The notes beneath the pieces were generated by a model. That model was given only the letters and a program-made list of their open reading frames with translations, made no database searches and had not been told where the DNA came from. Of a DNA stretch of 64,000 nucleotides, positions 10,572 to 60,088 are shown piece after piece (within the stretch, counting starts at the first letter, position 1; each line of letters begins with the position of its first letter). Source of the stretch: Haliotis rubra. Its lineage: Eukaryota. The position numbers and the translations under genes are program-made. Location of the stretch: assembly GCF_003918875.1 (NCBI RefSeq), contig NW_025766968.1:7626001-7690000 (forward strand), written 5' to 3'.

Positions 10572-13500
10572 ATGGGATGTGGAACGAGTTTTCCTGTGAT
10601 TCCTCCAGATCGCAATTTAGCATCGACAGTCGAAGAACCCCACCTGCCTGAAGAAAACGATAGCGGGATTTTGGATGCGGACTCCGTTGATGGAGCCATC
10701 GAGTCCAACGGTAACACGGAGTTGGTAGAAGGTACATCTGACATTCAACTGATACAGACCCAAGAGGAACCAGGGTTACCTACTCCTAGCAAACCACTTG
10801 ACCAGACTCCAACCCTATTGTCTACAATGAGTACGGATATACCTCCTTTCAATCAAGACTGTCTGAAGTTAGCTCAGCAGTTAGTCACCAAACATCCTCT
10901 GTTAAAATCCGGGTTTGAAGACATCAACTCCTTAGTAAATGCTCTCGAAGACGACCCCGCTTTGGCGTCAAACGGAGAACAGATTAGGGTGCTCGCACAT
11001 AAGGCAATAGGACTTTCATACGTGAACAAGGATGAGTCCCACAGACAGATATTTGCAGAGTACCTGTCTTACACGCGTGCTGCAGATGCTATATACAAGG
11101 CGTATAGTTTGTATCTTAAAGCCAGGAATCTTGAGTTCTTGACGGATAAAGTAGCTCGAGCACAGCTGACGTCAGAGGGAAGCTACCAATTTGTCCGTGA
11201 TATTAGGGGGTTGTTGTGGAACTACACAGACGCCAGTGTCCAGTTCGGCGAGAGGGTCTGCAACAGTGGCCTCCTGCGATATTTTGTGGGGGACCTGGAG
11301 GCTGTTCTGAAAGAAGCTGGTAGCCCTGACAATGTATGTACCAAGCCTTCAACATTGCATCATAAGAGATCGTTCATAATTTATGGCTGTGTGGTGTGTG
11401 TGGTGGTGTGGTGATGATGAATTTAAGGGGGGTCACCCATTTTGTTCTGGGGAGGTGGGGTGGGGACGGTCATCAATTTTGTACACATGTACTAGAGGTG
11501 GGTGGGGTGGGTTGTGTTTGTACATGACATCCAAGGGGGAAGGGGCACATGGTTCTCCATAAAATCATCATTCTCCAAACCATCTTTATCAAGGGTGTAG
11601 AGAAACAACTGTGGATGTAGTCAAACTGTTGTAATACTGTATGCAATCTTTGTATTATTTTTGTGTGACATACATTAACATGATGTTAAATGTTACTTTG
11701 ATTTATAAGATATGAAGCGAGAGTTTAGGCGATACAGTAGCTACAAGACAAGCAAACAACGATAGGACGAAGTGTATAGCGATGGTTGACAGACTGTAAT
11801 TGCGGAGTGTGGATTAACGGACTGTTTTGAATCTGTGCTATCTATCAAGTGTGGATCTTTGTTGACAAATTATGAATCAAAGCGTGTTGACCAGTTGCGA
11901 ATGCGTTTTAATGATTTTTATTTGTACATCTGCATTTACGACCAACTGTAAATCTTTGTTGAAGATCCATCATTAATAGTTTTTGATGGTTTGTTGCTTC
12001 TGTGAAGATCCGGGTTAGAATTGGTCTTGAGCAACCCATGCTTGTCGTAAGAGGCGTCTTAAAGGATTCGGTGGTCAGGCTCGCTGACTTGGTTGATGCA
12101 TGTGATCGTATCAGAGTTGCGTAGATCGATGCTCATGATGTTGATTACTGGATTGTCTGGTCCAGACCCGTATATTTACTGATCGCCGTCATATATAAAT
12201 GTATATGGAATATTGCTGAGTGCGGCATTCAACAAACAAACAACAATTAATGGTTTGCTGAGTATTTCTAATGACGGCCTGTTGTTCATCCTTGATGTGC
12301 AGGTATCCGTACGTGACTCCTTCTTCCGGTCTGCTAGGGGTGTCCTCCACAACTGCACCAACAACCCCATCACCCGCCAACCTATCAGGGAACTGGGAAC
12401 AGTATCTGTTGCCATGGGCTACCTCAAAGGTGAAGCCCCAGGTGAGTGGCGCCGACAGGAATGAAATACTGCAATATATACAATATATTTCTGTATATGC
12501 TATATCTGTCGACCTATAAATATAGTTAGTAGTGCCATATCCCAAACAAATATCTTTAATTACTCTTGACGTGAAGATCCAAAGAATGAATCGGTATGAA
12601 GAAAGCTGTGGTAGTCGAAAGAAGCAACTAACGGGATCGAGTGGTCAGAGTCGTTGACGTGGTTGATGCATGTGATCGTATTCCAATAGGGCTCGTAAGT
12701 AGGTCACGGTACTTCGCGAGACCTCAGTACTTCCGGTGACAAACAGCGTTTCAAACCTTTTCGATAGGCCTCATGGCTGTCAGGAACCGATAATACTTGC
12801 AGGAATAACAAATTTCCGATCAAGCCATCCCCAAATTAGGCAAGTATTACGACTGTCAACATCTGTCCGGTCTAGTAAACTCATATTTGGCCCTATTGCT
12901 TACACGTTAATCGAGGCTCATGATTATGATAATATAATTTGTCCTCAGACCATAGGAAGTTTCTGTATTTACAATTTGTCCCAAATAGCTTGTGACAAGT
13001 CATAAATCACACCTTCTAAGAAACAAAATGGCAGCATTCTGAGAATGATAAGTTCCAGATTTGCTGGATGGGGTAATATTCTACTAGGCATTTTGATGTT
13101 ACTTCCTAAAATCTTGTACCATGGGACCCGCTTCACAAACCAAGCTATGTACATTTACAAAGTCTATCAGGGGACGTTTGGTTAACCTACAGAGGGGTAC
13201 AATGTGTGAAGCCCATAACTGGTATCCTCCATTATGACACTGCAGAAATAACTAGACGTAAAACTAGACTCACTCACTTCAGAGTCTTTGAATTTTCCAC
13301 CTTTCTTGATTCAACAGAAATTAAAATGATGATTCTTCTGCTGCTGGCGAGCATAATCGACGAGGATGACAATAAAGCTCTTCTAGCAGACAGAACCGTC
13401 TTTACCATAATGTTGAACATGATCTTGTACGCCTGGAGAGATCAACGTCATCGCTGCAACGGCTTCTCTGCGTCTGAGCTGATAGCCGGGCTCACGGGAC

Positions 13501-16500
13501 TGGCGAAGAATGACGACAATAAGAAGATCCTCACAGAGAAGGGAGCGATCAATGTACTAATGACTGTGATGCAGGAAGGATCGGATGATGAGCGAGAGAA
13601 GGCAGTTCAGTGTGTTTGGGAGCTTGCATTCGACAAGGATAATCAACGGATATTTTTGGTAGGTCGTTAAAGTGAAGTCTTATGGGTTCATGATCATGTT
13701 ATGTTATATGCATGTACAAAGAGTGAGAGAGTGAGTTGGGTTTTACGCCGTTTTTAGCAATGTTCCAGCAATATCACGGCGGGGGACACCAGAAATGGGC
13801 GTCACACATTGTACCCATGTGGGGAATCGAACCCGAGCCTTCGGCGTGACGAGCAAACGCTTTAACCACTAGCCTACCCCACCGCCCCGCATGTACAAAG
13901 AGCCTAGCATTTATTGAAAAATGGTTTTCAGTTAATGAATCACCACTTCTTATAGATATGGGGGCGGTGGGGTAGCCCAATGGTTAAAGTGTTTGCTCGT
14001 CACGCCGAAGACCCGGGTTCTATTCCCCACATGGGTACAATCTGTGAAGCCCATTTCTGGTGTCCCACGCCTTTCTATTGCTGGAATATTGATAAAAGCG
14101 ACGTAAAACCATACTCACTCATTCATAAGTCTACGTTCGCCTTAGCGTTAAACAAAACTCACTCTTATAGATATGAGTGTGGGTTAATGAATGTGGTGGG
14201 GTAACCTATATAGCTAGGGGTTAACGTACTTGCTTGTCTCGCCGTAGACCCGGGTTTAATTCCTCACATGGCTACAATGCGTGAAGCCAATTCCTGATGT
14301 CCTCCGGGCGCGATATTGCTTTAACACCGCTCATAGCGATGTCCGTACAAATCAATCATTCAGTCAAATAATTATAATCAAATTATTTTACAATGATTAA
14401 CGATTTCATGTTCTCAAATATGACTGAAATTGACATCCAGTACTGGTTTCATCGTTTATCCATCTTTTAAATAGATCACGATCTTTGGAGTGACGGATGT
14501 GCTTTGTTTTTAAAGAACTACAATAATCTTATTTGTCCCTATTTGTTCTGATGTTTAGTTATGTTTTCAGGAAAACGCTCAACTGATGGCAACACTGAGA
14601 AAACTGAACGGGTCACTAAACAAGAAACTGTCCAAAGTTTCCGGGGGCGCTCTGTGGGCTATCACCCAGGAGGAGAAGAGAGAGAACCAGAGTAAGAGAA
14701 CGTCCATTTTTTACTGGACATTTATTTTTGAAAAACCTATTTCATTTTAACCAGTACAATGAGACAAAACATCGCTTGAAGTTGATCCTCCTCTCACAGA
14801 AACATGCCTGTTTGAAGGAGTTCCTCTTCCCAGAATATTTAATGTTGCGTCCCCACCAAGCATTTTAATGTAATAAAAGGCGATTAAATGTTAAATATTG
14901 ACGACACTTTGACGTCTCCTCCCAAATTTAACTGTCACTGAACTGAAAGATTGTTATGACATGGCACTTTGTAAATTGTTTCTAAAGATTGTATCCCACG
15001 TTCATTTCGAGCAGAATTGAAGAAGAAAGATGTGGCGAAGAAGGACGAAAAGGTGCAGGATGCAGGTCATATTATGATCAGTTATCAGTGGGCGGATCAG
15101 AAAATGCTTATCAAGGTATGTTTCTTGTACTCCGACATGAACCTTGTTAGATATATTCTTCTTATGTCTATAGATCTATACGAGGCTTTGTCTATAATTC
15201 GCTGTGTGGACTGTGTCCATTTGACGTGCAGGAAAGCTTGATCATTGGCTCGTATCCTGGCTATATTTCCACAGCATTTTGGGTTTCAACAAAGTGGTAA
15301 AAATGCTACTTGGGGTTTTCCGTTCCGACACTGAAATACTGCTCAAAGCAGCGTTAAAGCAAACAAATCCGATCTTATTCTTCTAAATAATAAACTTGTC
15401 TTTAAGGTGAAGGAGTTTTTGAAAGGCCACAACTTTAAGGTGTGGATGGACATCGACAACATGGAGGGGTCCACGCTGCAGGCGATGGCGGAAGCCGTTC
15501 AGAACGCCTCTGTGGTGTTGGTGTGTATGTCGGAGAGGTACAAGCTGAGTCAGAACTGCAGGTCAGGTGGGTAGGACAACTACAGTAGTTTCAGTTGTAT
15601 TACAGGCCGATATGAATGGCCCATTTAACACAATATTCACACCAGTAGTGGTTAAACAGTTAGAGGTGTGAAGGATCAGTGGCACTGCATTCAGCAGTTC
15701 TTGAATTGTCTCAGGACACTTGCGACTTGGTCGACACATCGTATCCAAAATGCATCTTCTTTCAGGGGCATTTTAGAAGTTTTAAAGATGAAGGAAAACC
15801 AAGTTGTATGGATTGTCAACTTCTTTATTGCAATGAATGCGACGTTTCGGTGTAGGTACTCACACCGTTGTCAAGCAGGTGCTTCAGCAAGTGTTGGACA
15901 ACGGTGTAAGTACCTGCACCGAAATGTCGTATTCATTGCATATGACATAGGTTTCCGTCATCACTGGATTGTCTGTTCCCGACTTGATTATTTGCAGATA
16001 GCTGGAATAACAACAAATAAACAAACAAGCTCTTGCGAAGGTTTCATGCGTCGCACACTGTGCATGTCTTAGCCGTCCCAGTAACCAGTGTTCATGGGTT
16101 CGAATCCCAAATTGTTCCTGATTCAGTATATCGATTTTTTCAGAACTATACCTGGCAAGGTTACCGAGGAGGCAAACAACGTAAACAGGTTTTGTCACAA
16201 TCAAGCTGACATACTGTAAAACTTAAATACTTACACAAACTTTAAATCCAGCTCACTCGTACCCAGTTTCGTACATACAGACCGGTTTGTGACAAATAAC
16301 AATCTGGATGATAAGACGTCCATATTACAGTTGTAGACGACATGTCTGCCCAATATCTGACAGCTTTAGCAAGCACGTGATCATGGAACAAGTCACTTCC
16401 GGTTCAACCCACAAAGGAGAGTTAATTCTAAACTTATCCTCGAATGGACATTATTTTTCTAATCCTAAAGGGACCATATCTTTCGATCATATCTTTAAAG

Positions 16501-18620
16501 GGACAGTTACCTCCAATCTAATCCTTGAAGGGATAGTTACTTCCGGTGTAATTCTTCAAGAGACTGTTATTTTCCGATATAACCTGACTGGGTGATTAGG
16601 GACATTTTCAACTTATATTTCAATTTTTGAGCCCTGTTCCATGTCACCCTTAGTCTCAGATTAGCAGGAGACCCTGAAAGTAAAGTAAATCCTCCATCCT
16701 CACTCAGTCAGTTTTGAAAAACAAAACAAATATGGGCTCACAAAAACAACAGTTCTTTGACCTCCTAGCTTACTTTGCCTCCATGTACGGTGATACAGAA
16801 CTATACCTAAGAGGATTTGCTGGAAACATTTTATCACATAGAACCTGACTCAAGCGATTTTACATTACAGAAGCTGAGTATGCCTTTGACCTCAGGAAGC
16901 CCATAATACCCCTTCTTCTACAGAGAGACTACAAGCCCGATGGCTTTCTGGGATTGATCAAAGGGGCAAAACTCTTCTTCGACTTCAGCGGAAAATACCC
17001 TTTCGAAAAGAAAGCTTCGGAGTTGGTGAAGGAACTTGGTGCTCGAGGCAAGGCAGGGTCGTCAGCCGATAGTATTGACGTGAGTGACAACATTTCTGTC
17101 CAGTCAGATTCGTACGTGAAACACCTATGTCCTTAAACGAGCTTTACTGGTGTGTTTTTCATCTGACAATAGCTTTTCAGCGGATTTATATCTCAAATGA
17201 TACATAGCAACGGTAATGCCATCGTTTTCTCGAACATAAACAATATCTCGTGGGTATAAAGGCGAAGTGTGAAAAAGCAGCGATTTTGACGTACTGGGAA
17301 AACTGTAGTCATACCAACCTCGATTTAAGAATCCCTGGGACAAAGAATTAATCTTTGTTTAGGTAGAACCTTCGAACTGCACTCTGAAGGAGAAAAAGAA
17401 ACGTCATCTTTGTTATTTACGAATGATATAATACCACATTTAAAAATATATTCAGTAACAACGGATACACCGTTTTCAGTATCTTTCAAGTTTTTTTAAA
17501 GAATATCACTCTAAAACAATGATTCTGTTACTACAGATATTGGTTAATCAGGGCGAATTCCCTTGATTGGTACCGTCAGGATTAACGAGATTTCCCTTTA
17601 CTCAGCGTCTTTATGAATATCTCATTGTTACAGGTTTCTTCCAAATTGTTTCAGGGGGAGACAACTGCAGTTGTGAAGTCCCAACCGTCTGATGCTGGTC
17701 GGGGCGCGAGTGGTACAGCCAACTGGTCACAAAAAGATGTCCAAAACTGGCTTTGTAAACTGAACTTGGAAAAGTAAGTATCTGATAAACATTTGACAAT
17801 GGGAACAAGTTTCATCGTAGTCGTCTTATCAATTGACGGAGCTCTATGCTTCAGATTAGTGAGATATTTGAATGTTAATTTTGATTCAAGAGTTGCGGCC
17901 CTTACCTGTGTGAGGACTTGCTGTTGTTGAATCACCTTATAGTGTTTTCAGTGGTCATATCAAACATTTGTCTCACACAGTGCTGTCCAAGACTGTTACA
18001 CTTAGTGTTTTTTCAGTTTTACAACCACCATGAACGAGTTGAGGGACTTTGTCGCTGTTGGAGTGGAACAAAGTCACTGAGATGAAAGCATGATGTATGT
18101 TGAATTTGTCCAGGTTCAGAATATTTCTGCTCCCTTATTCAGTGATCGTTTTTCAGACATTCTTCGCTGAAAGGTCTCACCGGAAAGCAGTTGATGTTTC
18201 TTCATAAGATATCGTACAAGGTAAACAAGTGGATACTTCAAAGTGGCTGTATATATTCATAATATCACATCACGATTCTTCACGAATCAAATTCGGGATA
18301 ATTAAATTTAGTATAAAGTTTTCCAATCCTCTCTTTATGTGTCTTGACTTTGTTAATCCAAACGAAAAAAGAATTGTTTAAGGGTTCATTTTTAGCGTTC
18401 TGGTTGATAATGGTTAAAAGGATATGGTCACTTACTTTTGAATATGAGCACTGACTAAAGCAGATATTCAGAATTTCACAGGGTTCAATTACTGCTCAGC
18501 GATAAAATTCTCTTTTGTTTACAGGCACCAGAATTCTTCTACAATTACATCAAAAATGACCTGAAGTTGAGCAGTCTGGAAGATCTGATGATCTTCAGTG
18601 AGGCTGTGGAGAATTTGTAA
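10572..18620 (+). CDS. Paralog A: myristoylation-motif ARM-repeat / TIR / SAM-like protein, 703 aa, 10 coding exons
   Basis: Exons 10572-11333, 12303-12441, 13318-13658, 14571-14691, 15015-15115, 15407-15566, 16871-17079, 17655-17773, 18157-18220, 18525-18620 (TAA). All introns GT-AG, phases 0,1,0,1,0,1,0,2,0; 2112 nt open. Starts MGCGTS. ARM-like motifs LLWNYTD, GVLHNCT, GLTGLAKNDDNKK, AVQCVWELAF, GALW. TIR GHIMISYQW..VWMDID..VVLVCMSERYKLSQNCRSEAEYA..IIPLLLQ. SAM-like WSQKDVQNWL..LTGKQLMFL..APEFF. Confidence 0.93.
11362..11580. mobile_element. MITE-like element in intron 1 of gene A
   Basis: TIR-like TAAGAGATCGTTCATAATTTATGGC; body GGGGGGTCACCCATTTTGTTCTGGGGAG shared with 26944-27072. Confidence 0.6.
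12001..12245 (+). mobile_element. Family-2 short retroposon, near full length
   Basis: GTGAAGATCCGGGTTAGAATTGGTCTT..CCCATGCTTGTCGTAAGAGGCG..GGAATATTGCTGAGTGCGGC and (AAAC)n tail. Confidence 0.85.
13724..13888 (-). mobile_element. Family-1 tRNA-SINE
   Basis: Full length; 14-bp TSD GCATGTACAAAGAG at 13710-13723 and 13889-13902. Confidence 0.92.
13961..14163 (+). mobile_element. Family-1 tRNA-SINE (a degenerate copy follows at ~14195-14360)
   Basis: GGGGCGGTGGGGTAGCC..GGTTCTATTCCCC; TSD CTTATAGATATG at 13949-13960 and 14164-14175. Confidence 0.9.
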
Positions 18621-21470: not shown

Positions 21471-21674
21471 GTAAATACACTACGAACAGCTGGGTGTGAA
21501 ATGGACATGGCGTATATACAGAGAACACCTCCCCCACCCCCAAAAACGAATAAAAACAACAACACCAAACAAGTATTGATCACAGAATTAACCGATAATA
21601 CGTTAATGTAATGTTCGGGATCGCCATCCCTCGGTGAACGTTGATCATCGGTGTGTACCGCAGTTTGTCTATGA

Positions 21675-40348: not shown

Positions 40349-40549
40349 CTACACCACCTGTGGCGTACAGGACTTGTTAGCGACGTGGTGCACGCCTAGC
40401 GTATGACTCGAACAGGTGTCATAGGAAATATACACCTGGAAAACACTGCAGTTCTGTTGTTATGTCTACATATGACAACGGCCTCGCTTTAGAGCCGTTG
40501 TGCCAGCACTGACTGGATTCTTGCGCTATAGAAATTCTTAGTTGATGAG

Positions 40550-44300: not shown

Positions 44301-45410
44301 GAGCATATTGAATACTCATTGAAGTACAAAAATGTCAGTCAGATTTAACACAAATAAACACACACATTCACATATACAAACACTATGAATAGCTTAAGTC
44401 TGATCTTTACTCGAGTTCGTGTGCTCTCACCCCTGACGGTTCTCTGTCAGAGCTTTGTGTACTCGTTGCCATGGTGAGAATGACTAATAACAACACTTAT
44501 TTCGGATCTTGATACCGGTGTGTTGGCGGGAAAATGTCGGCCATGTTTGACCTGCATACTCTCTCATACCACATGGAATATGTAAGCGAGGACCCATAAA
44601 CTATTAGGTCAGTAGAGAGAGAACCCGTTACCGTTTTGTAGCTGTGATTTGGTGTATAAATGTCGAGATGACATGCTGAGATATTGTGATGCAATGTTTA
44701 TAGCAGCGGGTGGTAAACAATTTTCGTTTGAGAAATGTCATTTGATCGATTGTGGCATATTGAATAACACAACTATGGTAGTTATCCGCAGTTTAACACA
44801 CATCTTGAATAACGGCAAATCAAGAAGAAATGTTCCAATGTAGAAATCGATGTGTATTGAATATTGATTAGGTGCATGCATTGCATGCGTTCTTGTGTCA
44901 TTATCCAGAACTGAAATGTGTGGACATTAATGCAGTTATGCAAGTCTCCGGTTTTATCTGAGGATTATGAAACCGATATTACCGAGAGGTATTTAACGAT
45001 CAGTGAAACAAATCTAGCATATTACATGAGAGACATTGATTGAAGCGCTCGTATAATATTCTCGATACGTGATAGGCGTCCCTGTGGTCGACATCCCATT
45101 CAACAAATCAATAATGCTCACTTTGCTTTGAACAATGTTCCATCGATACTAAGTGTTCTTATCCTCAAATGAGGCATCGAACTCGTGCCTACAGTGCAAA
45201 GGTGGTCATGACCTGGCTACCACCGCCCAGTATTACCGAATAAGGGAGGGATGGGGCCTTTGGCTACGTTGCGAATAGCGAACGCTGTAACGCTGTAGTT
45301 AAAACCACTCGTTACTAGTATACTATAGTTACTAGGAACTAGTTACTAGTATAACCAAAATCAGGACGTTCAATTCGCCCTACAGATTCCTTATTGTTTC
45401 AGATAATCAG

Positions 45411-48400: not shown

Positions 48401-51384
48401 AATGGAAGAACTACAAATAGAATCCTGTCAGAGGTGAAACCGATGTATAATGGCAACCACATCATCGTAGAGACACATATATATATAGTGTGATATACTT
48501 AGTTTAGTCCCATTCTTTCAGGAAAATAAAGAGTTGCAACAGCTACTTCAGGAACTCAAGTCATCCTCTTCTACAGGCGTTTCTAAAGCTGCAGCTGGAG
48601 CATTGTGGGTGCTAGCTATGGAGGAAAACAATAATACAAGTACGTAACAACGAACCATATTACCATTAGCCTTAGTAACGTAAACGTTAGACAAAGTAAC
48701 GGAACACTTATCATGATAATTATGCTGTGAACCTGATTGTCCGATTTTGTATATAATCTCCTGCGTCAAGTAGGGGTTGCTGAAGACCAACTGTAACCCA
48801 ATTCTTAGCGGGGCTTTTATTAGTTTTGGGAAAAGCTCTAAATTTGCCAATTACTGTTTTTTCATCTCACTGAATATGTTATTTTCTGTCTATTTATGTT
48901 ATGTCATAATTTTTGTTAGATTTTATTCATGCATATAATTTTAATGTTGACAACTAAGTTTACGTTTTACTTAATTGGTTGTCTTATAGTTGTCTTTATT
49001 TATTTGTTACGTATATCTGTCCTTTTAAATATCATGGTATCGAATACCAAGTGCTGTACTTTTTAAATAGCATACTTTAGGTCGAAATCCTACAATTATA
49101 GAGTATCGTAAACAGTATCACCTATGTGTTTTGATATGTGGTATGAACAGTGAAGTAAAATTTGAGGGTGAAACATAAACATTTTTTCAGCATTAACAGG
49201 GGGTCTCGAAGGGAGGAGTGGGTCATATGGAGGTCATGTGATGATCAGTTACCAGTGGACAGACCAGAAGCTGGTGCTGAAGGTATTTTATAATTTGTTT
49301 TCTGAATTGATCAAACATATCATTAAAAGGTTATATGTTGTTCAGTGACCAGTCGATTGACCACAAGGAGGTGTGTCTTTCCATTGGTTTTCGGAATTGA
49401 TAACAAAATATTATTCAGTATAATGTCATTGATATTGCAATTATTTTTCAAAAATAGATCAAGGAATCACTGCGCCAGAAAGGGTACAAGATCTGGATGG
49501 ATGTTGATCACATGGAGGGGTCCACGCTGCAGGCGATGGCGGAGGCCGTTCAGAACGCTTCTGTTGTGTTGGTGTGTATGTCGGAGAGGTACAAGCTGAG
49601 TCAGAACTGCAGGTCAGGTGAGTCAACAATTTCAGGAATCCATTGTTTGGTCTAGATAAGTTTGAATGTTGCAATTTTGACTACATGTAATGGTGAGTAA
49701 AATTAATCTTTATCATGTTTTATATCAGAGGCTGAGTATGCTTTCTCGTTGGAGAAGAAGATTGTCCCTCTTCTGATGCAGAGGGCATATAAACCAGACG
49801 GATGGTTGGGTATGATTAAAGGGACAAAACTCTTCTTCGACTTCAGCGGAAAATACCCGTATGATCAGAAATTAACTGATCTTGTGAAGGAGCTTGGTGA
49901 ACATGGGAAGACTCAGCAGCTCACTGATGAAATTGATGTAGGTTATGACGTAATGGTGACTATTGCATAAATATAATGGTGTATTGATAGGTAAACATTA
50001 TAGAAAGCACAAAATGTACACGTGAGAAGTCAGCGAGGACTATCCTTCAAGCAGGTGCTGCACTTAGGTCATAGATTTCATAGGTCAAGTATCAAGTCGG
50101 TTATTGGAATGCATATTCTTACACTGAATGTTCTTCTTAGTGCTAAAGGTAAATGTGATGATACTCTGTGTCTGATTGACAAAACGTTGATTCTTTCATG
50201 ACACTTGTTATTAATTACGAATAGTCTATGTGTGATATTGTATAACACAGACAGTTGTTGTTTTTATCTTCAGGGTGAGACTAAGATAGTTCCCGTTGTG
50301 AAAGCAGCTCCCCTTGCCGCTGCAAGAGGTCGGTCACTTGCTGACTGGTCAGTGAAGGATGTCCAGAATTGGCTCACGAAGACAGGATTAACAAAGTACA
50401 TATATCCTTGGTATTTACTTGTCTGAAGAATACCATAGTATGTGCCGTACCTACGGCGTCCTCACGCACTCTTATTCAGTATATTCATTGTTTGGGATTG
50501 TAAATGTAGGTTAAATATATGTTCTTGGAGTACGTCAACCCAAAAAATATAATAGGAGAGGGTAATCACTCAATTAAGTTGAATGAATCAAACCAGAACT
50601 GATTTTCATTTGTTTCAGTGACTCGTTGCTACGTAAAATGACTGGGGATGATCTATTGTTTCTGCGTGAAGTATCTCACAGGGTAAGCATGAAGGCTTGT
50701 TGCAATCCATTACTAAATATATGGGATGTCGAAACGCCGTATTTCCAATTTAGCTCGAATTGAGTTCGCTCCAAAGTTTGGTTCCAGGCACCATGATATG
50801 AGTCCTTACTCATGTAAATCAGAGTTAAAATTGATCTTTAGCAATCCATGCTTGTCGAAGGATTGTCTGGTCCAAACTCGATTATTTACACACCGCCGTC
50901 ATATGGCTGGAATATTGCCGAGAGCGCCGTTTAACAACAAACAAACAAACAAACAAACAAACTCTTCTGCCATATACTTCTACAAAAACACGAACAACAG
51001 AACAATATCAAATGAACATTATTTTTTCCCATAATTACATTGTATGATTAGGAGGTGTTAATATGATAACGTTTCAGATGCTGGTGACTGATGTAAGATA
51101 ATTAATGCTTTGAATGTCTCGTTCCACAAGAGAAGTTGCATGTTGTTCCAAATGCATGTTGTGTCTGGTACCAGCACTGAGATTATATGACAAACTTTAT
51201 CATTTGATTCCGAAATTCCCATTCACCTCAGGGAATTCGCTTCAATACTGGATTGTGATCGGAAAATAACCTATAACTTTTATCCGTTCAGGCACCCGAG
51301 TTTTACTTCAACTATCTGCTGACTAATCTTCAGCTGCCCTTTGATGACCTCAAGAAGTTCAGCAGAGCTGTTGACAAGCTGTGA
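45411..51384 (+). CDS. Paralog C: ARM-repeat / TIR / SAM-like protein, 667 aa, 10 coding exons (left arm of palindrome)
   Basis: Exons 45411-46082, 46759-46891, 47757-48097, 48522-48639, 49191-49282, 49458-49617, 49729-49937, 50274-50395, 50619-50682, 51292-51384 (TGA); 2004 nt open, all GT-AG. Starts MGSTSS. TIR GHVMISYQW..IWMDVD..SQNCRSEAEYA. SAM-like WSVKDVQNWL. Confidence 0.93.
50820..50961 (+). mobile_element. Deleted family-2 copy in intron 9 of C (mirror copy ~54535-54680 in D)
   Basis: ATCCATGCTTGTCG..GGATTGTCTGGTCCA..GCTGGAATATTGC and (AAAC)n; present in both arms, so it pre-dates the inversion or was copied between arms. Confidence 0.75.
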
Positions 51385-54115
51385 ATCATTATCCCAACTG
51401 TGTGAAGTTTTGGATCTAATGTATATTACATTACAAACTCTCAGATGTATCACTGGACGAATACGTGGCATAGGTTGACTTGCAGATAGTAATACATGCC
51501 TGTGTAATTGACATTGTGTCTGCTGCATATGACAACCTTCAAAGTCAGTTTAATCATGTTTGATGTAGTACAAACATATGTACCTCTAACCCCCTAACCC
51601 CACACCCACCCGACCCCACCCCCCTAACCTCCCCACCCATATACCCCCTGCAGGTTGACGGTTTGACAGCCAACTTATCCATTACATAACAGCCTTTCCT
51701 ATGCATATTTGTGTGATGATATCTCTAGAGATCTGTCTTATGCTTATTGAAATGCCTTTGTTCTTAATAATATTCGTTCAGATGTTGACATCAGTAGCGT
51801 GTGAATCTACGATCATGCACACTCACTACAGACCGAATGAATTATGAACATATTTCTGCATGAATTCTGCACGGATAAGTTTTTGGATTGAATTGGTAAA
51901 TGTACCAGATGCTATAATGCTATATGTATGCACTCTGGTAATGTAAGATACAAACAATATGTATATGGACTTTTCTTTGGTTTTGTTTGTGAAACATACA
52001 TATGACAGAATGAATACAGATGCACTATCTATGTTTATATGCGATAAGCTGAAATCTGTGATACATCTATATTTGAATGTATATATAATGTTTCACACAA
52101 ATGCATATCTGTGATAGATAAAATTGATATTTTGTAGTTCTACTTTTGATGTTCATGTTGAATCCAATATGAATTACATGCGTCGTTTTAATTTAAAAAT
52201 ACAACACTCGTGTCTAGTCTATATCCATGTCAATATGTGAGAGATACTACAATGTCCATACTATAATGTATGATATGTTTATATGTAATATATTTCTCCT
52301 AAGATGAGGCAGCCCTAAGTTATAATCGGAGTTTGCAATATCATTGTTTCTGCAATGTAACCAGGTACAATCATCAGAAAGAATCACTCAGAAAGGTGAA
52401 TAATTATGTGTAATTAATTATTTGACATTTCCATGTATATAGCAAGTTCTTTAATTTAAATAAATCTAACCTATATTTTTATAACCACTGTTATGTTATT
52501 CTGTGTGCCAAATTCGTTTACGTAATTACACACAAGACGTGAAGGAAAAACACCAAATCGGTTTGGGAAACGCTACTATACACTTGAACGAATTTGTGGA
52601 GGCTGTGTTAAACGCTCAATTACGTTGTTGAACCGTTCATGTGACCAATGTCTCTATGTGTTCGAGCGTAATTGTCAAATAATGTAATCATTTCATATGG
52701 TCTTGTTCGTAAAATGTTTACTTGATCCATTGAAAATATTTCATTTGTAACCGGCGGTTACAAATGAAATATTTTCAATGGATCAAGTAAACAACTTTAC
52801 GAACAAGACCATATGAAATGATTACATTATTTGACAATTACGCTCGAACACATAGAGACATTGGTCACATGAACGGTTCAACAACGTAATTAAGCGTTAG
52901 ACACAGCCTCCACACATTCGTTCAAGTGTAAGTAGCGTTTCCCAAACCGATTTGGTGTTTTTCCTTCACGTCTTGTTCTTGTGTGTAATTCGTAAACGAA
53001 TTTGGCACACAGAATAACATAACAGTGGTTATAAAAATATAGGTTAGATTTATTTAAATTAAAGAACTTGCTATATACATGGAAATGTCAAATAATTACA
53101 CAATAATTAGGTAGTTTTCTGAATGATTCTTTCTGATGATTGTATCTAGTTACATTGCTGAAACAATGATATTGCAACCTCCGATTATAACTTAGGGCTG
53201 CCTCATCTTAGGAGAAATATATTACATATAAACATATCATACATTATAGTATGGACATTGTAGTATCTCTCACATATTGACATGGATATAGACGAGACAC
53301 GAGTGTTGTATTTTTAAATTAAAAACCGTGCATGTAATTCATATTGGATTCAACATGAACATCAAAAGTAGAACTGCAAAATATCAATTTTATCTGTCAC
53401 AGATATGCATTTGTGTGAAACAATATATATACATTCAAATATAGATGTATAACAGATTTCAGCTTATCGCATATAAACATAGATAGTGCATCTGTATTCA
53501 TTCTGTCATATGTATGTTTCACAAAGAAAACCAAAGAAAAGTCCATATACATATTGTTTGTATCACACATTACAAGAGTGCATACATATAGCATTATAGC
53601 ATCTGGTACATTTAGAAATTCAATCCAGAACAATCCGTGCAGAATTCATGCAGAAATGTGTTCATAATTCATTCGGTCTGTAGTGAGTGTGCATGATCGT
53701 AGATTCACACGCTACTGATGTCAACATCTGAACGAATATTATTAAGAACAAATCCATTTCAATAAGCTTAAGACAGATCTCTAGAGATATCATCACAAAT
53801 ATGCATAGGAAAGGCTGTTATGTAATGGATAAGTTGGCTGTCAAACCGTCAACCTGCATGGTGGGGGTGGGGATTGGGTGGGGTTAGTAGTTGTGGGGTG
53901 GGCGGGGTTAGGGTACATATGTCTGTACTATATTACACATGATTAGACTGACTTCGAACGGTGCTATATGTAGCAGACACAATGTCAATTACACAGGCAT
54001 GTATTACTATCTGCAAGTCAACCTATGCCACGTATTCGTCCAGTGATACATCTGAGAGTTTGTAATGTTATACACATTAATTAATCCCAAAACTTCACAC
54101 AGTTGGGATAATGAT

Positions 54116-57100
54116 TCACAGTTTGTCAACAGCTCTGCTGAACCTCTTGAGGTCATCAAAGGGCAGCTGAAGATTAGTCAGCAGATAGTTGAAGTAAAAC
54201 TCGGGTGCCTGAACGGATAAAAGTTACAGGTTATTTTCCGATCACAATCCAGTATTGAAGCGAATTCCCTGAGGTGAATGGGAATTTCGGAATCAAATGA
54301 TAAAGTTTGTCATATAATCTCAGTGCTGGTACCAGACACAACATGCATTTGGAACAACAGGCAACTTCTCTTGTGGAACAAGACATTCAAAGCATTAATT
54401 ATCTTACATCAGTCACCAGCATCTGAAACGTTATCATATTAACACCTCCTAATCATACAATGTAATTATGGGAAAAAAATGTTCATTTGATATTGTTCTG
54501 TTGTTCGTGTTTTTGTAGAAGTATATGGCAGAAGAGTTTGTTTGTTTGGTTTGTTTGTTTGTTGTTAAACGGCGCTCTCGGCAATATTCCAGCCATATGA
54601 CGGCGGTGTGTAAATAATCGAGTTTGGACCAGACAATCCTTCGACAAGCATGGATTGCTAAGATCAATTTAAACTCTGATTTACATGAGTAAGGACTCAT
54701 ATCATGGTGCCTGGAACCAAACTTTGGAGCGAACTCATTTCGAGCTAACTTGGAAATACGACGTTTCGACATCCCATATATTTAGTAATGGATTGCAACA
54801 AGCCTTCATGCTTACCCTGTGAGATACTTCACGCAGAAACAATAGATCATCCCCAGTCATTTTACGTAGCAACGAGTCACTGAAACAAATGAAAATCAGT
54901 TCTGGTTTGATTCATTCAACTTAATTGGGTGATTACCCTCTCCTATTATATTTTTTTGTTGACGTACTCCAAGAACATATATTTAACCTACATTTACAAT
55001 CCCAAACAATGAATGTACTGAATAAGAGTGCGTGACCACGCCGTAGGAACGGCACATACTATGGTATTCTTCAGACAAGTAAATACCAAGGATATATGTA
55101 CTTTGTTAATCCTGTCTTCGTGAGCCAATTCTGGACTTCCTTCACTGACCAGTCAGCAAGTGACCGACCTCTTGCAGCGGCAAGGGGAGCTGCTTTCACA
55201 ACGGGAACTATCTTAGTCTCACCCTGGAGATAAAAACAACAACTGTCTATGTTATACAATATCACACATAGACTATTCGTAATTAATAACAAGTGTCATG
55301 AAAGAATCAACGTTTTGTCAATCAGACACAGAGTATCATCACATTTACCTTTAGCACTAAGAAGAACATTCAGTGTAAGAATATGCATTCCAATAACCGA
55401 CTTGATACTTGACCTATGAAATCTATGACCTAAGTGCAGCACCTGCTTGAAGGATAGTCCTCGCTGACTTCTCACGTGTACATTTTGTGCTTTCTATAAT
55501 GCTTACCTATCAATACACCATTATATTTATGTAATAGTCATCATTACGTCATAACCTACATCAATTTCATCAGTGAGCGGCTGAGTCTTCCCATGTTCAC
55601 CAAGCTCCTTCACAAGATCAGTTAATTTCTGATCATACGGGTACTTCCCGCTGAAGTCGAAGAAGAGTTTTGTCCCTTTAATCATACCCAACCATCCGTC
55701 TGGTTTATATGCCCTCTGCATCAGAAGAGGGACAATCTTCTTCTCCAACGAGAAAGCATACTCAGCCTCTGATATAAACAAGATAAAGATTAATTTTACT
55801 CACCATTACATATAGTCAAAATTGCAACATTCAAACTCATCTAGACCAAACAATGGATTCCTGAAATTGTTGACTCACCTGACCTGCAGTTCTGACTCAG
55901 CTTGTACCTCTCCGACATACACACCAACACAACAGAAGCGTTCTGAACGGCCTCCGCCATCGCCTGCAGCATGGACCCCTCCATGTCATCAACATCCATC
56001 CAGATCTTGTACCCTTTCTGGCGCAGTGATTCCTTGATCTATTTTCGAAAAATAATTGCAATATCAATGACATTATACTGAATAATATTTTGTTATCAAT
56101 TCCGAAAACCAATGGAAAGACACACCTCCTTGTGGTCAATCGACTGATCACTGAACAACATATAACCTTTCAATGATATGTTTGATCAATTCAGAAAACA
56201 AATTATAAAATACCTTCAGCACCAGCTTCTGGTCTGTCCACTGGTAACTGATCATCACATGACCTCCATATGACCCACTCCTCCCTTCGAGACCCCCTGT
56301 TAATGCTGAAAAAATGTTTATGTTTCACCCTCAAATTTTACTTCACTGTTCATACCACATATCAAAACACATAGGTGATACTGTTTACGATACTCTATAA
56401 TTGTAGGATTTCGACCTAAAGTATGCTATTTAAAAAGTACAGCACTTGGTATTCGATACCATGATATTTAAAAGGACAGATATACGTAACAAATAAATAA
56501 AGACAACTATAAGACAACCAATTAAGTAAAACGTAACTTAGTTGTCAACATTAAAATTATATGCATGAATAAAATCTAACAAAAATTATGACATAACATA
56601 AATAGACAGAAAAAAACATATTCAGTGAGATGAAAAAACAGTAATTGGCAAGTTTTTCATCAAAACTAATAGAAGCCCCGCTAAGAATTGGGTTACAGTT
56701 GGTCTTCAGCAACCCCTACTTGACGCAGGAGATTATATACAAAATCGGACAATCAGGTTCACAGCATAATTATCATGATAAGTGTTCCGTTACTTTGTCT
56801 AACGTTTACGTTACTAAGGCTAATGGCAATATGGTTCGTTGTTACGTACTTGTATTATTGTTTTCCTTCATAGCTAGAACCCACAATGCTCCAGCTGCAG
56901 CTTTAGAAATGCCTGTAGAAGAGGATGACTTGAGTTCCTGAAGTAGCTGTTGCACCTCTTTATTTTCCTGAAAGAATGGGACTAAACTAAGTATATCACA
57001 CTATATATATATGTCTGTACGATGATGTGGTTGCCATTATACATCAGTTTCACCTCTGACAGGATTCTATGTGTAGTTCTTCCACTTACACAGACTACGA

Positions 57101-59221
57101 AGTATAGAGGGCATGTCACGCAAGCGTCCTGTCAGTACAATACCTAGCCAAACATACGGCTGACAATTTTCCGCAGTGGGGAATCCTTCCTTCTTTTATA
57201 CTAATGACGGACGTGTAGTAATAAATATTAAAAATATTTTATGGCCAGAAGAAACAACGCATATCAATGATTATGTAATCCACTTAAAAATTATAAATAT
57301 ATTTAGTTCTGAACAATGAGAAATGAAAGTGGCAAATGAAGCATTTACTCGAATCTCAAAAACCAAACAATCCACTTCCAAGGAACTTACATTGAATATT
57401 TCCTTGTTAGTTTTATCAAAAGACAGTTCCCATATACATTTCACGGCATACTCTTTCTCTTCGTCCGATCCAAATTTCATAATCTCTGTAAGTATAGGAA
57501 CGGCTCCCTTTTCCCACAGGACCTTCTTGTTGGTGTCATTTTTGGCTAGACCGGTCATCCCATCCACTATCTCATCCACACTGAAACCAATATAGCGGTG
57601 TTCCTCAATCGCCCATGCTTCCTTCAGTATATCGAACAATTGATCAATCACGGTTTTGTCAGCCAGAAGATGTTCACTTTCGGTTTCGTCCACGATGTTG
57701 GCAAGAGTAAACAGAGTCTGCAGCTTACCCTCTGGAACAATCGACATAAGTCATGACTCTCAAGGGTCCGCATCGTTATTAATACTATCAACATAATTAG
57801 TGTCAACATGAACATCACATTGTGTTAACTGGAATATAACTTATCTATTATACAAAAGACGTTAGACATGTACAACAGTTAATAAACAATTGAAAGATGA
57901 ACAATCCTATAGACGAGTGTAAAGAGTTTCATCAGTATCTGTTGTTGGTTTTAGTCGAATAGGATTTCTCTATAATTATCACAATCTCGCTTCTTGAGCA
58001 ATAAAGGTATTCTCATTATTAACATTGAACACATTTTACTCCAAATTCAGATTCGACTCCAATACTTTTGTATGAATCTACCCATGAGAATACTCATTCA
58101 TTTTTATATAATGTAAATAATTGATCGTTAAGCAAAGAGAAAGGCAGTCGATCCATGTTTGGCCAACATGATCACGTTCCTGTGAGCTGACCATCCAGTT
58201 CAGATCCATTCTTTAATCACGATTTAAACCCTGACCGGAAGCAATTATCAGGTGCTGTGTAGGTAATATTATAGTCCGTTTGGCTCAAAAGCGGACTGAT
58301 GAATTGCAATCTAACTCAAAAACTAATAAACATATAATACTCAACGAAACGTTGATCATAATAAAATTATCAAACCAACTCTATGATTTTTGTGCAACAT
58401 CTATGTCCTAACAATAAACATGATGTTTAGCAAACTATCATTAAAATATTTACACAGTTCACTATTTGTTACGAGGGAGGAGTAAAAAGAGAGGAACAAT
58501 ATTCACAATATTGTTCATCGTTCACAATGAGTGGTATCCGATGTCCACTGGAATTCGCAAAAGCTATTTCTTCAAGAACATGTTCGCAAACAGATGTGTA
58601 ATATTTACCATCTGACCTGCACTTGAGATACGGCAGCAGGACGGAAACTGTCCCGAGTTCCCGAAGATGTTGTCTTGTCGCAGGGTTCCTTGAGCAGTTC
58701 TGGAGGATGGAAATTGCCGCTTCAAATGTGTTGTCAAGCTCCTGCAACATACATTGCCAAAATGTTCACGGTTACGTCTAACTGACATTGTGTTCATCTT
58801 CCATCTGTTCAGTTCTAATCAGTATTAAGTCATAATTTCCGGTTTGTTTCTGTCAACCCATGCTTGTGTTACGAAGCGACGTGCTGGACCTTGTGGTCAG
58901 GAGTGGTGTCGTTGTTGACTCCTGCCTTTGTTCCCCGACGGTAAGGGGCGTTCCTTCAAATAACATTCACTGTTTTGTCTGGTCGAGACTCGATTATTTA
59001 TAGTCAAGTCAATCTTCATAAAATTCTCTGGGAATATTTTAAATAACATCAGTTTAGTATTTCAATTAAAAATGTTCAAGCACAAGGCTCGTGCTCAATA
59101 TGAATTTGTCATTTGATTGTGTACATGTTCCTTTATATCCTGAATGGTCGTTTTAAAGTTTAATGTGTGGGTGTATTCCTGGAACGGATCCAGGATTTTG
59201 GAGAAGGTGTACGTGTGTGTG

Positions 59222-59265
<44 letters not shown>

Positions 59266-60088
59266 TGTGTATGTGTGAAGGGGAGGAAGGTGTATTTATG
59301 TGAGATATCTATTGATGTAGATATGTGGATAATTACATAGATCAAGATAGGTAGGTAGGTAGGTAGGTAGATAGATAGGTATTATAATTCTTTGAAATTC
59401 ACAATCATTACATGTGCGTAAATATCTCACTTACCTCGTCATCATCGGCGGCATCTTCCACATCCATCTGTTTTAAATCTTCCACGAAATATTTGAGCAT
59501 CCCAGCTTTGCTCACCTTTTCAGCAAAACTGAGACTACCATCCGTATTGCTCCACACAATCATTCGTATCATGGATAACTTTTGAGCAACAAGAACCTGC
59601 CCCTTGTCCTCAAAGTTCATCTTAATAAGCGACATACATGTAAACCCAAGTGATTTCAGCAGAGTGTCAAATGCTGCATTCAGCACTTCAGCAGCGTCAG
59701 ATACCACTAAGTATTCACCGAGCTTACGACGGTCCGTATCAGCGTAGTCCACGAAGCCCATAGATCTGCAGTTGTAGATCTTTGAATAGTTCCCAGTCTT
59801 AGTGAAAGCATCAGCTTTAAGTTCTTGAATAAGAGTGTCGATTTCGTCAAATTCCGAATTTAAATGTGAAGCATCTTCCCGCAGTTTCTTCATTTCAGCC
59901 TCCGTATCCACGCCAGACTTAGGTACAGAGTTTACTGCTGGTTTCTGAGTGATATCAGTTCCTCCTCGATCAGACTGTGTTTTAGATAGGTTATTCACCG
60001 GTTGATTACGAGTATCGCCTGGGCTAGAATTTGCTGCATCAGCAGTTTGACGAGGAGGATGCCTCTGCATGCCGCTTGTACTGCCCAT
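54116..60088 (-). CDS. Paralog D: ARM-repeat / TIR / SAM-like protein, 661 aa, inverted near-copy of C (right arm of palindrome)
   Basis: Exons in transcript order 60088-59435, 58741-58609, 57731-57391, 56967-56850, 56305-56214, 56038-55879, 55768-55560, 55223-55102, 54879-54816, 54208-54116 (TGA); 1986 nt open. All splice sites mirror C. Starts MGSTSG. About 23 aa substitutions plus 2 indels versus C. Confidence 0.9.
59213..59276. repeat. Compound (GT)n(GCGT)n microsatellite; (GGTA)n follows at ~59348-59380
   Basis: Directly visible; absent from intron 1 of C. Confidence 0.9.

What the first reader, a model, noticed from the sequence alone, without database searches (positions are those of the whole stretch)
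10572..60088. Tandem array of four ARM-TIR-SAM genes: a domain-permuted SARM1-like candidate immune NADase system
Seen: four intact 10-exon paralogs with identical intron positions and phases (exon 6 is 160 nt and exon 9 is 64 nt in all four). Each encodes a lipidation-like N-terminus, a variable helical region, ARM-like repeats, a TIR and a single C-terminal SAM-like domain. There is no signal peptide, transmembrane segment, LRR or death domain. Established: SARM1/TIR-1 is ARM-SAM-SAM-TIR, with ARM as sensor and autoinhibitor, SAM as oligomeriser and TIR as NADase, and it is typically low-copy and conserved. Inference: this is a separately assembled, expanded family with the same logic but SAM placed after TIR, acting as membrane-tethered cytosolic sensors that trigger NAD+ cleavage or signalling. 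ARM/TIR combinations may already appear in invertebrate TIR inventories, but I know of no functional description.
Basis: partly seen in the sequence, partly recalled or inferred. Interest (0 to 1): 0.92.

Follow-up and report, generated by a model that had tools for sequence, protein, structure and literature searches.

The report
Abalone ARM-TIR-SAM gene cluster
Four neighbouring abalone genes encode probably lipid-anchored cytosolic proteins with armadillo repeats, a TIR domain that keeps the NAD-cleaving glutamate and a C-terminal SAM domain; they are real, but they belong to an old, widespread invertebrate 'ARM-TIR' family that is already catalogued and still lacks a demonstrated function.

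Summary
The window is from Haliotis rubra. It carries four intact 10-exon genes of 703, 655, 664 and 658 aa. Intron phases are identical, exon 6 is 160 nt and exon 9 is 64 nt in all four. G1 equals the public model LOC124282490. The assembly gap lies inside intron 1 of G2 and touches no coding sequence.

It is not a simple tandem array. G1 to G3 are on the + strand and G4 is on the - strand. G3 and G4 are the arms of a 7.4-kb palindrome with a 1-nt centre, which could be a recent inverted duplication or an assembly artefact.

ARM, TIR and SAM were each confirmed by profile searches, and ARM and SAM also by predicted fold. An N-myristoylation motif is conserved across phyla. The putative catalytic glutamate is invariant.

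The family is not a molluscan invention. It occurs from corals to amphioxus, with look-alikes in green algae, and is listed as "ARM-TIR" in oyster and Aplysia inventories. The abalone copies form a Haliotis-specific expansion. The TIR is not of SARM1 type.

A 2026 preprint tested four isolated TIRs of this TIR cluster, including a near-identical amphioxus orthologue, and recorded no activity. The SARM1-like mechanism is plausible but unproven.

Another reader of this scan had already noted the palindrome.

The parts
10572..18620 (+). G1, 10 coding exons, 703 aa (10572-11333, 12303-12441, 13318-13658, 14571-14691, 15015-15115, 15407-15566, 16871-17079, 17655-17773, 18157-18220, 18525-18620). 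Domains in the protein: disordered N-terminus 1-92 starting MGC, helical plus ARM region 95-461, TIR 474-593, SAM about 630-703.
   Evidence: model; identical to LOC124282490. TIR_2 at 77 bits. AlphaFold2 model; exon 1 present in RNA-labelled runs.
25958..40348 (+). G2, 10 coding exons, 655 aa (25958-26590, 27214-27346, 27718-28061, 28605-28716, 30795-30886, 31915-32074, 34545-34750, 35681-35805, 39243-39306, 40250-40348). Intron 5 uses a GC donor.
   Evidence: The H. rufescens orthologue P0003 has the same length and is 85% identical.
26817..26944 (.). Assembly gap (N run), inside G2 intron 1 (26591-27213). It does not interrupt coding sequence and was not filled.
   Evidence: N run; exon borders. 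The residues around the exon 1/2 join match the orthologue P0003 without a break (by eye), and both proteins are 655 aa.
45411..51384 (+). G3, 10 coding exons, 664 aa (45411-46082, 46759-46891, 47757-48097, 48522-48639, 49200-49282, 49458-49617, 49729-49937, 50274-50395, 50619-50682, 51292-51384). An alternative exon 5 acceptor lies at 49191.
   Evidence: The exon 2/3 junction is seen in an RNA-labelled contig. Exon 6 alone scores 39.1 bits on TIR_2.
54116..60088 (-). G4, 10 coding exons on the minus strand, 658 aa (60088-59435, 58741-58609, 57731-57391, 56967-56850, 56296-56214, 56038-55879, 55768-55560, 55223-55102, 54879-54816, 54208-54116). The protein is 95.5% identical to G3.
   Evidence: dN/dS against G3 is 0.47.
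45342..60157 (.). Palindrome holding G3 and G4: arms 45342-52753 and 52755-60157, centre at 52754 (1 nt). The 39 nt on each side of the centre are perfectly complementary. Identity is 96.3% over 7254 aligned nt, introns included.
15407..15566 (+). Exon 6 (160 nt in all four genes; G2 31915-32074, G3 49458-49617, G4 56038-55879). It encodes the TIR core up to the C-R-S triplet. The putative catalytic Glu (E542 of G1) is the codon split by the phase-1 intron 6 and is completed at the start of exon 7.

Best explanation
These are four members (three if G4 is an artefact) of a Haliotis-specific expansion of an ancient, widespread cytosolic ARM-TIR-SAM family.

Each protein most likely works as follows:
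- It is N-myristoylated, and G1 may also be palmitoylated at Cys3, so it sits on the cytosolic face of a membrane.
- About six canonical armadillo repeats follow a variable helical region. They bind a protein or peptide partner and hold the TIR in check.
- On a trigger, the C-terminal SAM domain drives head-to-tail self-association.
- Self-association brings the TIR domains together. They then consume NAD+ or make a cADPR-type signal through the conserved glutamate.

Shown here: gene structures, domain identities and order, conservation of the Glu and of the MG..S/T start, family distribution, and local expansion.

Inferred, not shown: lipidation, ARM gating, SAM oligomerisation, enzymatic activity and any immune role.
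For: - Gene models and intactness.
- TIR: TIR_2 at 77-85.6 bits in family members.
- The Glu of C-R-S-E-A-E-Y is invariant in 44 of 44 sequences. Working from the coordinates in Table S4 of preprint 10.64898/2026.04.20.719644, it is the residue that table lists as catalytic in the amphioxus orthologue.
- The seven best solved matches of the TIR profile are TIRs or SEFIR domains, and the best is an NAD-cleaving TIR: Cat1 6.8e-9, then RPS4, a bacterial SEFIR domain protein, TIR-1 and SARM1.
- ARM: the family profile hits Vac8, beta-catenin, ODAD2 and designed ARM proteins at E 1e-13 to 2e-26. Foldseek hits APC and designed ARM.
- SAM: profile hits with E below 0.2 are all SAM domains, including SARM1 SAM1. 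24 of 37 members hit SAM_3. The AlphaFold2 model has pLDDT 95.7. All 50 top Foldseek hits are SAM domains, among them Shank, DGK-delta, polyhomeotic/PHC3 and SARM1; from memory, several of these self-associate.
- MG..S/T start in 39 of 44 members. No transmembrane segment.
- SARM1 orthologues are the best Swiss-Prot structural matches.
- Related animal TIR clusters were active in the preprint: an oyster 639-aa protein made cADPR, a herring TIR made cADPR, and a coelacanth TIR depleted NAD+.
- Lineage-specific expansion, typical of immune genes. A tandem pair also exists in H. rufescens.
Against: - Four isolated TIRs from the same 40%-identity TIR cluster (Chlamydomonas, amphioxus, gar, Phallusia) have a blank 'Active' column in Table S4 of the preprint. 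The amphioxus one is about 96% identical to family member P0035 (by eye). The negative is weak, because the RUN1, RPP1 and RPS4 control TIRs are also blank and the TIRs were tested without their SAM domain.
- The Trp four residues before the Glu in SARM1, Cat1 and AbTir is Asn here (by eye).
- No ARM-TIR contact, oligomer or lipidation was tested.
- Foldseek E-values for the small SAM model are weak (0.35 or higher).
- Expression evidence is thin: one junction for G3 and k-mer presence for G1.
- There are no induction data.
Confidence: 0.5

Rival explanations
1. The proteins are non-enzymatic TIR adaptors or scaffolds. They sit at membranes and join TLR/MyD88-type TIR assemblies through TIR-TIR contacts. 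ARM and SAM serve as protein-docking modules, and the conserved Glu is structural or vestigial.
For: - This is the reading given for ARM-TIR and ecTIR-DC proteins in the inventories (PMC4346834; PMC9334734; PMC6321704).
- Isolated TIRs of this cluster were not active in E. coli.
- The ARM is of the canonical peptide-binding type.
- MyD88 TIR is also matched, weakly, at E 0.05.
Against: - The Glu is invariant in 44 of 44 sequences spanning corals to chordates, which is hard to explain without catalysis.
- The best solved match is an NAD-cleaving TIR, and SARM1/TIR-1 score above MyD88.
- Sister clusters are active.
- The same architecture occurs in green algae. From memory, these lack TLR/MyD88 signalling.
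Confidence: 0.3
2. G4 is not a separate gene. The spacer-less palindrome is a fold-back or haplotype artefact of a long-read assembly, so the locus holds three genes and G3 and G4 are two alleles.
For: - The arms meet at a single base, with 39 nt perfectly complementary on each side.
- Arm divergence of 3.7% is in the range of the differences between this assembly and contigs of DNA runs, which are 1-4%.
- A second contig of the same assembly (QXJH01001646.1) carries G3-like copies in direct orientation instead.
Against: - There is no N gap at the centre.
- Both arms keep intact ORFs, with dN/dS 0.47 and in-frame indels.
- The DNA contigs laid carry a third sequence type: 2 of 40 variants match G4 and 20 of 40 match the other contig. 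They neither confirm nor exclude two copies.
- Large gene-bearing palindromes do exist in genomes.
Confidence: 0.3
3. The proteins are brakes or decoys. Catalytically silent paralogues co-assemble through SAM or TIR with an active family member or with SARM1 and tune its output.
For: - Many paralogues share highly conserved TIR and SAM domains but have divergent N-terminal regions.
- The isolated TIRs were inactive in the preprint assay.
Against: - The Glu and the TIR core are under strong conservation in every copy.
- No copy shows loss of the active-site residue, which would be expected of a dedicated decoy.
Confidence: 0.1

Closest known systems
SARM1 / dSarm / TIR-1 (ARM-SAM-SAM-TIR NAD+ hydrolase)
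   Same: It has the same three domain kinds, a cytosolic location and a Glu at the TIR catalytic position. SARM1 orthologues are the best reviewed structural matches (E 4e-8 to 6e-7). The SAM profile and the SAM model both match SARM1 SAM1.
   Different: - Order is ARM-TIR-SAM, with one SAM instead of two.
- The ARM is canonical beta-catenin/Vac8-like.
- The TIR profile scores only about 19.6 bits on the isolated SARM1 TIR, against 39 bits on Cat1.
- The preprint places the two TIRs in different clusters.
- The N-terminus carries a myristoylation motif.
- The genes are multi-copy and locally expanded.
- Whole-chain TM is only 0.17-0.23.
Invertebrate 'ARM-TIR' proteins of immune-gene inventories (oyster, PMC4346834; Aplysia, PMC9334734; probably one of the ecTIR-DC families of Gerdol et al. 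2017, which I could not read)
   Same: It is the same family. The Aplysia member LOC101851026 (P0022/P0167) is listed under ARM-TIR in SFile3 of PMC9334734. Members are cytosolic, uncharacterised and lack a transmembrane segment.
   Different: Those inventories do not record the C-terminal SAM domain or the conserved N-myristoylation motif, as far as the held texts show. They treat the proteins as putative TLR adaptors.
TIR cluster A0A0B7AZE4_1 of Hurieva et al. 2026 (bioRxiv 10.64898/2026.04.20.719644)
   Same: Lingula A0A1S3H547 (P0193, in the same 90% cluster as family member P0056) sits in this cluster with an active-site GLU and an N-terminal 'TPR'-clan domain. The tested amphioxus TIR is about 96% identical to family member P0035.
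   Different: The preprint tested isolated TIR domains only and annotated no SAM. It recorded no activity for the four members tested. No Haliotis member appears in the passages returned; two of the tables are held truncated.
Green-algal Arm + TIR_2 + SAM_2 proteins (ESM Atlas clusters of about 730 aa, Chlorophyta)
   Same: They are the nearest neighbours by language-model features (0.94-0.95). By predicted structure (TM 0.55-0.58) they are nearest to the top molluscan cluster, not to P0002 itself. They carry the same three Pfam families. A Chlamydomonas 690-aa protein falls in the same TIR cluster.
   Different: They come from a different kingdom. In these clusters Pfam SAM_2 is recorded for 84-93% of members. 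I did not check their domain order residue by residue.
Cat1 (CRISPR-associated TIR 1), a bacterial filament-forming TIR; NADase activity from memory
   Same: It is the best solved sequence match of the TIR (39.1 bits, E 6.8e-9). The S..Y..S..C..E motif aligns with it.
   Different: It is a bacterial protein with no ARM or SAM, and its oligomerisation is driven by other domains.

Membership tests
SARM1 family | Domain order ARM - SAM - SAM - TIR with two tandem SAM domains | tested here: not met
   The order is ARM (about 190-461), TIR (474-593), then a single SAM (about 630-703).
SARM1 family | SARM1-type TIR domain (own clade or cluster) | tested here: not met
   The family TIR profile scores about 19.6 bits (E 0.007) on the isolated SARM1 TIR. 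That is less than on Cat1 (39 bits) or RPS4 (24 bits). The preprint places the two in different TIR clusters.
SARM1 family | Catalytic glutamate in the TIR alpha-C helix | tested here: met
   E542 of G1 (C-R-S-E-A-E-Y) is invariant in 44 of 44 sequences and aligns with the Glu of Cat1.
SARM1 family | ARM domain that binds NMN/NAD+ and autoinhibits the TIR | not testable with these tools
   The ARM here matches canonical peptide-binding ARM proteins. Neither the pocket nor ARM-TIR contacts could be examined.
Invertebrate ARM-TIR class (Zhang 2015; Aplysia immunome 2022) | Armadillo fold plus TIR domain in one cytosolic protein, without death domain, LRR or transmembrane segment | tested here: met
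   The family member LOC101851026 is listed in that class.
Enzymatic (NAD+-processing) TIR domains | Glu-dependent NAD+ cleavage or cADPR-isomer synthesis | not testable with these tools
   Only the residue is shown. Published tests of four isolated TIRs of this cluster were negative. Sister clusters were positive.
SAM domain | Helical SAM fold recognised by SAM profiles | tested here: met
   P0002:630-703 scores 23.1 bits on SAM_3 (cut-off 22.6), and 24 of 37 members hit SAM_3. PDB profile hits with E below 0.2 are all SAM domains. The model has pLDDT 95.7. All 50 top Foldseek hits are SAM domains, TM 0.40-0.68 (most 0.57 or higher).
SAM domain | Self-association (polymer or ring) | not testable with these tools
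   Best fold matches include the Shank, DGK-delta, polyhomeotic/PHC3 and SARM1 SAMs. From memory, several of these self-associate. No oligomer model was possible.
N-myristoylated proteins | Met1-Gly2 with a small or hydroxyl residue at position 6 | tested here: met
   G1 starts MGCGTS, G2 MGSSSS, G3 MGSTSS and G4 MGSTSG. 39 of 44 family members start MG with S, T, A, G, C or N at position 6. The modification itself was not tested.

The most novel reading that the evidence does not exclude
This family is a second SARM1-like machine, built independently of SARM1. A membrane-anchored protein uses canonical ARM repeats to sense a protein or peptide cue. Its C-terminal SAM then polymerises the TIRs into an active NAD+-consuming or cADPR-signalling assembly. 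The design would be ancient (shared with green algae), lost in some lineages, and expanded in abalone for immunity. The negative tests of isolated TIRs would then be explained by the missing SAM domain.
Probability: 0.3. Interest if true: 0.7.

Novelty: new member of a known kind. Interest (0 to 1): 0.4.

Why it matters
If the proposed mechanism holds, animals have a second, widespread TIR enzyme family beside SARM1, gated by oligomerisation. That would bear on how invertebrate innate immunity uses NAD+-derived signals, and on why TIR catalysis is conserved from bacteria to animals.

Three points make concrete, cheap tests possible: the C-terminal SAM, the conserved myristoylation motif, and the observation that only SAM-less TIR fragments have been assayed so far. 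As it stands, the cluster itself is an ordinary lineage-specific expansion of an already catalogued, uncharacterised family.

Tried and rejected
- Per-exon Pfam scans were too short to call ARM or SAM. Full-length public proteins found with an exon 3 profile solved this.
- A single-sequence search of the TIR against PDB found only Cat1. The profile search was needed to place SARM1, the plant TIRs and MyD88.
- Whole-model Foldseek against PDB was dominated by ARM hits and said nothing about TIR or SAM. A separate SAM model was made instead.
- I hoped the DNA runs X1-X3 would settle whether G3 and G4 both exist. Their contigs carry a third sequence type, so they do not.
- The look-up of encoding contigs found nothing for P0003.
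- Gerdol et al. 2017 (the ecTIR-DC classification) is not held, so the family number could not be assigned.
- An explicit TIR tree with SARM1, MyD88, TLR and bacterial TIRs was not built.
- tblastn of the four proteins found no further copy or fragment in the window.
- I rejected a missing exon in the N gap, and I rejected a signal peptide or transmembrane segment.
Full report
**What is in the sequence**

Six-frame ORF pieces of four sub-regions were compared with each other. They show the same series of ten conserved coding blocks four times: three times on the + strand and once on the - strand. Frame-consistent donor and acceptor pairs at conserved positions give four uninterrupted coding sequences:

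| Gene | Strand | Coordinates | Length |
|---|---|---|---|
| G1 | + | 10572-18620 | 703 aa |
| G2 | + | 25958-40348 | 655 aa |
| G3 | + | 45411-51384 | 664 aa |
| G4 | - | 60088-54116 | 658 aa |

Intron phases are 0,1,0,1,0,1,0,2,0 in all four genes. All introns are GT-AG except G2 intron 5, which has a GC donor (GCAAGT).

My G1 model is identical to a public protein, LOC124282490 of Haliotis rubra, so the window is blacklip abalone. G2 has the same length as its H. rufescens orthologue and is 85% identical to it. tblastn finds no further copy or fragment in the window.

**The assembly gap**

The only N run (26817-26944) lies inside G2 intron 1 (26591-27213). The residues on either side of the exon 1/exon 2 join read on without a break beside those of the orthologue P0003 (by eye), and both proteins are 655 aa. 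No coding sequence is hidden in the gap. The true intron length is unknown.

**Transcription**

- Of the runs laid on G3, three are DNA and cover the introns evenly. One RNA-labelled run has a contig that joins 46890 to 47756 (GT..AG, cut +1), exactly my exon 2/3 junction.
- G1 exon 1 is held at 0.49-0.64 of sampled words by four small RNA-labelled runs from different samples.
- This is thin but positive evidence for G1 and G3. G2 and G4 have none.

**Arrangement**

This is not a simple tandem array. G3 and G4 are the two arms of a palindrome.
- The arms are 45342-52753 and 52755-60157.
- They meet at one base (52754), with 39 nt perfectly complementary on each side.
- They are 96.3% identical over 7254 aligned nt, introns included.
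- Both arms keep intact ORFs. dN/dS is 0.47, and 11 of the 23 replacements fall in residues 99-179, before the ARM repeats.

A spacer-less palindrome may be a recent fold-back duplication. It may also be an artefact of a long-read assembly, with the two arms polished to two haplotypes. The DNA contigs I could lay carry a third sequence type: 2 of 40 variants match G4, and 20 of 40 match another contig. They do not decide the matter.

That other contig of the same assembly, QXJH01001646.1, carries a 96% G3-like gene (P0001) behind a more diverged G3-like copy, in direct orientation. The locus is therefore structurally unstable, or represented twice in the assembly.

In H. rufescens two family genes also lie in tandem.

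**Domains**

- TIR. Pfam TIR_2 scores 77-85.6 bits in full-length family members and 39.1 bits on G3 exon 6 alone.
- ARM. Single Pfam ARM hits are borderline. A profile of 44 family members, however, hits Vac8, beta-catenin, ODAD2/ARMC4, APC and designed armadillo proteins at E 1e-13 to 2e-26. The AlphaFold2 model (pLDDT 76.8, domains mostly above 85) matches APC and designed ARM structures.
- Model layout. Residues 1-92 and the linker 605-630 are disordered. A helical region at 95-184 is followed by about six three-helix repeats up to 461, then the TIR at 473-597, then a small helical domain.
- SAM. A profile of the C-terminal domain hits only SAM domains in PDB at E below 0.2 (liprin-beta, TEL/ETV6, SMS1, Shank, Eps8, SARM1 SAM1, neurabin). 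24 of 37 members hit Pfam SAM_3, and the isolated G1 domain passes its cut-off (23.1 against 22.6 bits). Its own model has pLDDT 95.7. All 50 best Foldseek matches are SAM domains, TM 0.40-0.68, most 0.57 or higher.
- Other features. No hydrophobic stretch reaches transmembrane level, and no LRR or death domain is reported.
- Lipidation motif. All four proteins start MG with a permitted residue at position 6, and G1 has Cys3. 39 of 44 family members from several phyla do the same. This fits the N-myristoylation rule (established knowledge). The modification itself is not shown.

**The TIR**

The glutamate in C-R-S-E-A-E-Y (E542 of G1) is invariant in 44 of 44 sequences. It aligns with the corresponding Glu of Cat1.

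| Solved TIR | Score of the family TIR profile |
|---|---|
| Bacterial Cat1 | 39 bits |
| Plant RPS4 | 24 bits |
| C. elegans TIR-1 | 22 bits |
| Human SARM1 TIR (isolated domain) | about 19.6 bits |
| MyD88 | about 17 bits |

The TIR is therefore not nested in the SARM1 TIR family, and its best solved match is an NAD-cleaving TIR.

Between G1 and G3 the last 105 nt of exon 6 are 97% identical at the DNA level. The first 55 nt are 53% identical and the flanking introns are unrelated. This suggests a short gene-conversion tract, or exceptional constraint.

**The family**

An exon 3 (ARM) profile finds 1302 proteins at E up to 0.001, and 363 at E up to 1e-10, among 50% cluster representatives. 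Many are 600-770 aa with the same layout.

Named members come from Haliotis, Aplysia, Plakobranchus, Argopecten, Mytilus, Solemya, Lingula, Branchiostoma and Pocillopora. All are 'uncharacterized' apart from one automatic 'myosin-7' label on a Pocillopora verrucosa entry.

In the ESM Atlas the nearest clusters outside molluscs and rotifers are green-algal proteins of about 730 aa. They carry Arm, TIR_2 and SAM_2.

A maximum-likelihood tree puts G1, G2, G3/G4 and their Haliotis orthologues in one clade with 100/100 support. The cluster is therefore a Haliotis-lineage expansion of one branch of an ancient family. The G1 and G2 lineages predate the split of H. rubra and H. rufescens.

**What is already known**

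- 'ARM-TIR' proteins are counted in the oyster immune inventory (PMC4346834).
- They are also counted in the Aplysia immunome (PMC9334734). Its supplementary list includes LOC101851026, a member of this family.
- The ecTIR-DC classification of Gerdol et al. 2017 probably covers the family, but I could not read it.
- The taxon make-up of 'group 18' in PMC7075850 resembles this family. This is a lead only.

The most relevant source is the preprint 10.64898/2026.04.20.719644.
- It places the Lingula protein A0A1S3H547, which shares a 90% cluster with family member P0056, in TIR cluster A0A0B7AZE4_1. That entry has an active-site GLU and a TPR-clan N-terminal domain, and no SAM is noted.
- Its Table S4 lists four isolated TIRs of that cluster (Chlamydomonas, B. 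lanceolatum, gar, Phallusia) with a blank 'Active' column.
- The amphioxus one differs from family member P0035 at about 5 of 125 positions (by eye).
- TIRs of related clusters were active: an oyster 639-aa protein (cADPR), herring (cADPR) and coelacanth (NAD+ depletion).
- Known plant TIR controls (RUN1, RPP1, RPS4) are also blank. The assay therefore misses real enzymes, and none of the constructs included the SAM domain.

**How it most likely works**

Shown: an ARM-TIR-SAM architecture with a conserved lipidation motif and an invariant glutamate at the catalytic position.

Inferred:
- The protein sits on a membrane.
- The ARM repeats bind a partner and restrain the TIR.
- The SAM domain drives self-association.
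- Clustered TIRs process NAD+.

This is the logic of SARM1, whose orthologues are the best reviewed structural matches. It is built from a different ARM type, a different TIR clade, one SAM instead of two, and a different domain order.

The main rival is a non-enzymatic adaptor role, which the published negative assays fit. I put the enzymatic, oligomerisation-gated reading at about 0.5 and the adaptor reading at about 0.3.

**Verdict**

The finding is real and well described, apart from the orientation of the fourth gene. Its interpretation is a reasonable but untested hypothesis. The family is neither mollusc-specific nor unlisted.

The additions here are:
- the confirmed C-terminal SAM;
- the phylum-wide myristoylation motif;
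- the Haliotis-specific expansion;
- the palindrome caveat;
- the link to the 2026 activity screen.

Another first-stage reader of this scan had already noted the palindrome, the TIR signature, the exon 6 homogenisation and the pre-ARM substitutions. I checked each of these here.

Noticed in passing
window 45342-60157, centre 52754: A gene-bearing palindrome with 7.4-kb arms, a 1-nt centre and 96.3% arm identity. It may be a real fold-back duplication or an assembly artefact.
   Followed up: partly
window 15462-15566 (G1), 49513-49617 (G3), 55983-55879 (G4): The last 105 nt of exon 6 are 97% identical between G1 and G3, synonymous sites included. The first 55 nt are 53% identical and the introns are unrelated. 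This looks like a short gene-conversion tract over the TIR core. G2 is 88-89% identical there.
   Followed up: partly
window 30887-30892: G2 intron 5 uses a GC donor (GCAAGT), the only non-GT donor among the 36 introns. The orthologue's protein reads across the same junction.
   Followed up: partly
L001 (QXJH01001646.1:3739-29790), 19-7242 and 9014-16620: Another contig of the same H. rubra assembly carries a diverged G3-like copy (80-90% identity, with only a 171-aa TIR gene call). It is followed in direct orientation by an intact 96% G3-like gene (P0001). A G1-like fragment (P0155) is on the same contig. It is either a haplotig or a second copy of the cluster.
   Followed up: partly
window 46211-46810 and 50811-51010: Very high k-mer depth in DNA runs (up to about 390,000 against about 100 nearby) marks high-copy repeats inside G3 introns 1 and 9. 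Loose ends near 46277 resemble a tRNA-derived SINE.
   Followed up: no
window 13727-13869, 21638-21998, 40549-40693, 44137-44345: A repeated element, similar in all frames and therefore a DNA repeat, occurs in G1 intron 3, in the G1-G2 spacer, and twice downstream of the G2 stop codon, in the G2-G3 spacer.
   Followed up: no
window 49191 / 49200 (G3) and 56305 / 56296 (G4): Two in-frame acceptors 9 nt apart lie before exon 5. The public model of the close copy P0001 uses the upstream one, which would make exon 5 92 nt long, as in G2.
   Followed up: partly
window 45705-45947 (G3 residues 99-179): 11 of the 23 amino-acid differences between G3 and G4 fall in the helical region before the ARM repeats (dN 0.041, dS 0.066 there).
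   Followed up: partly
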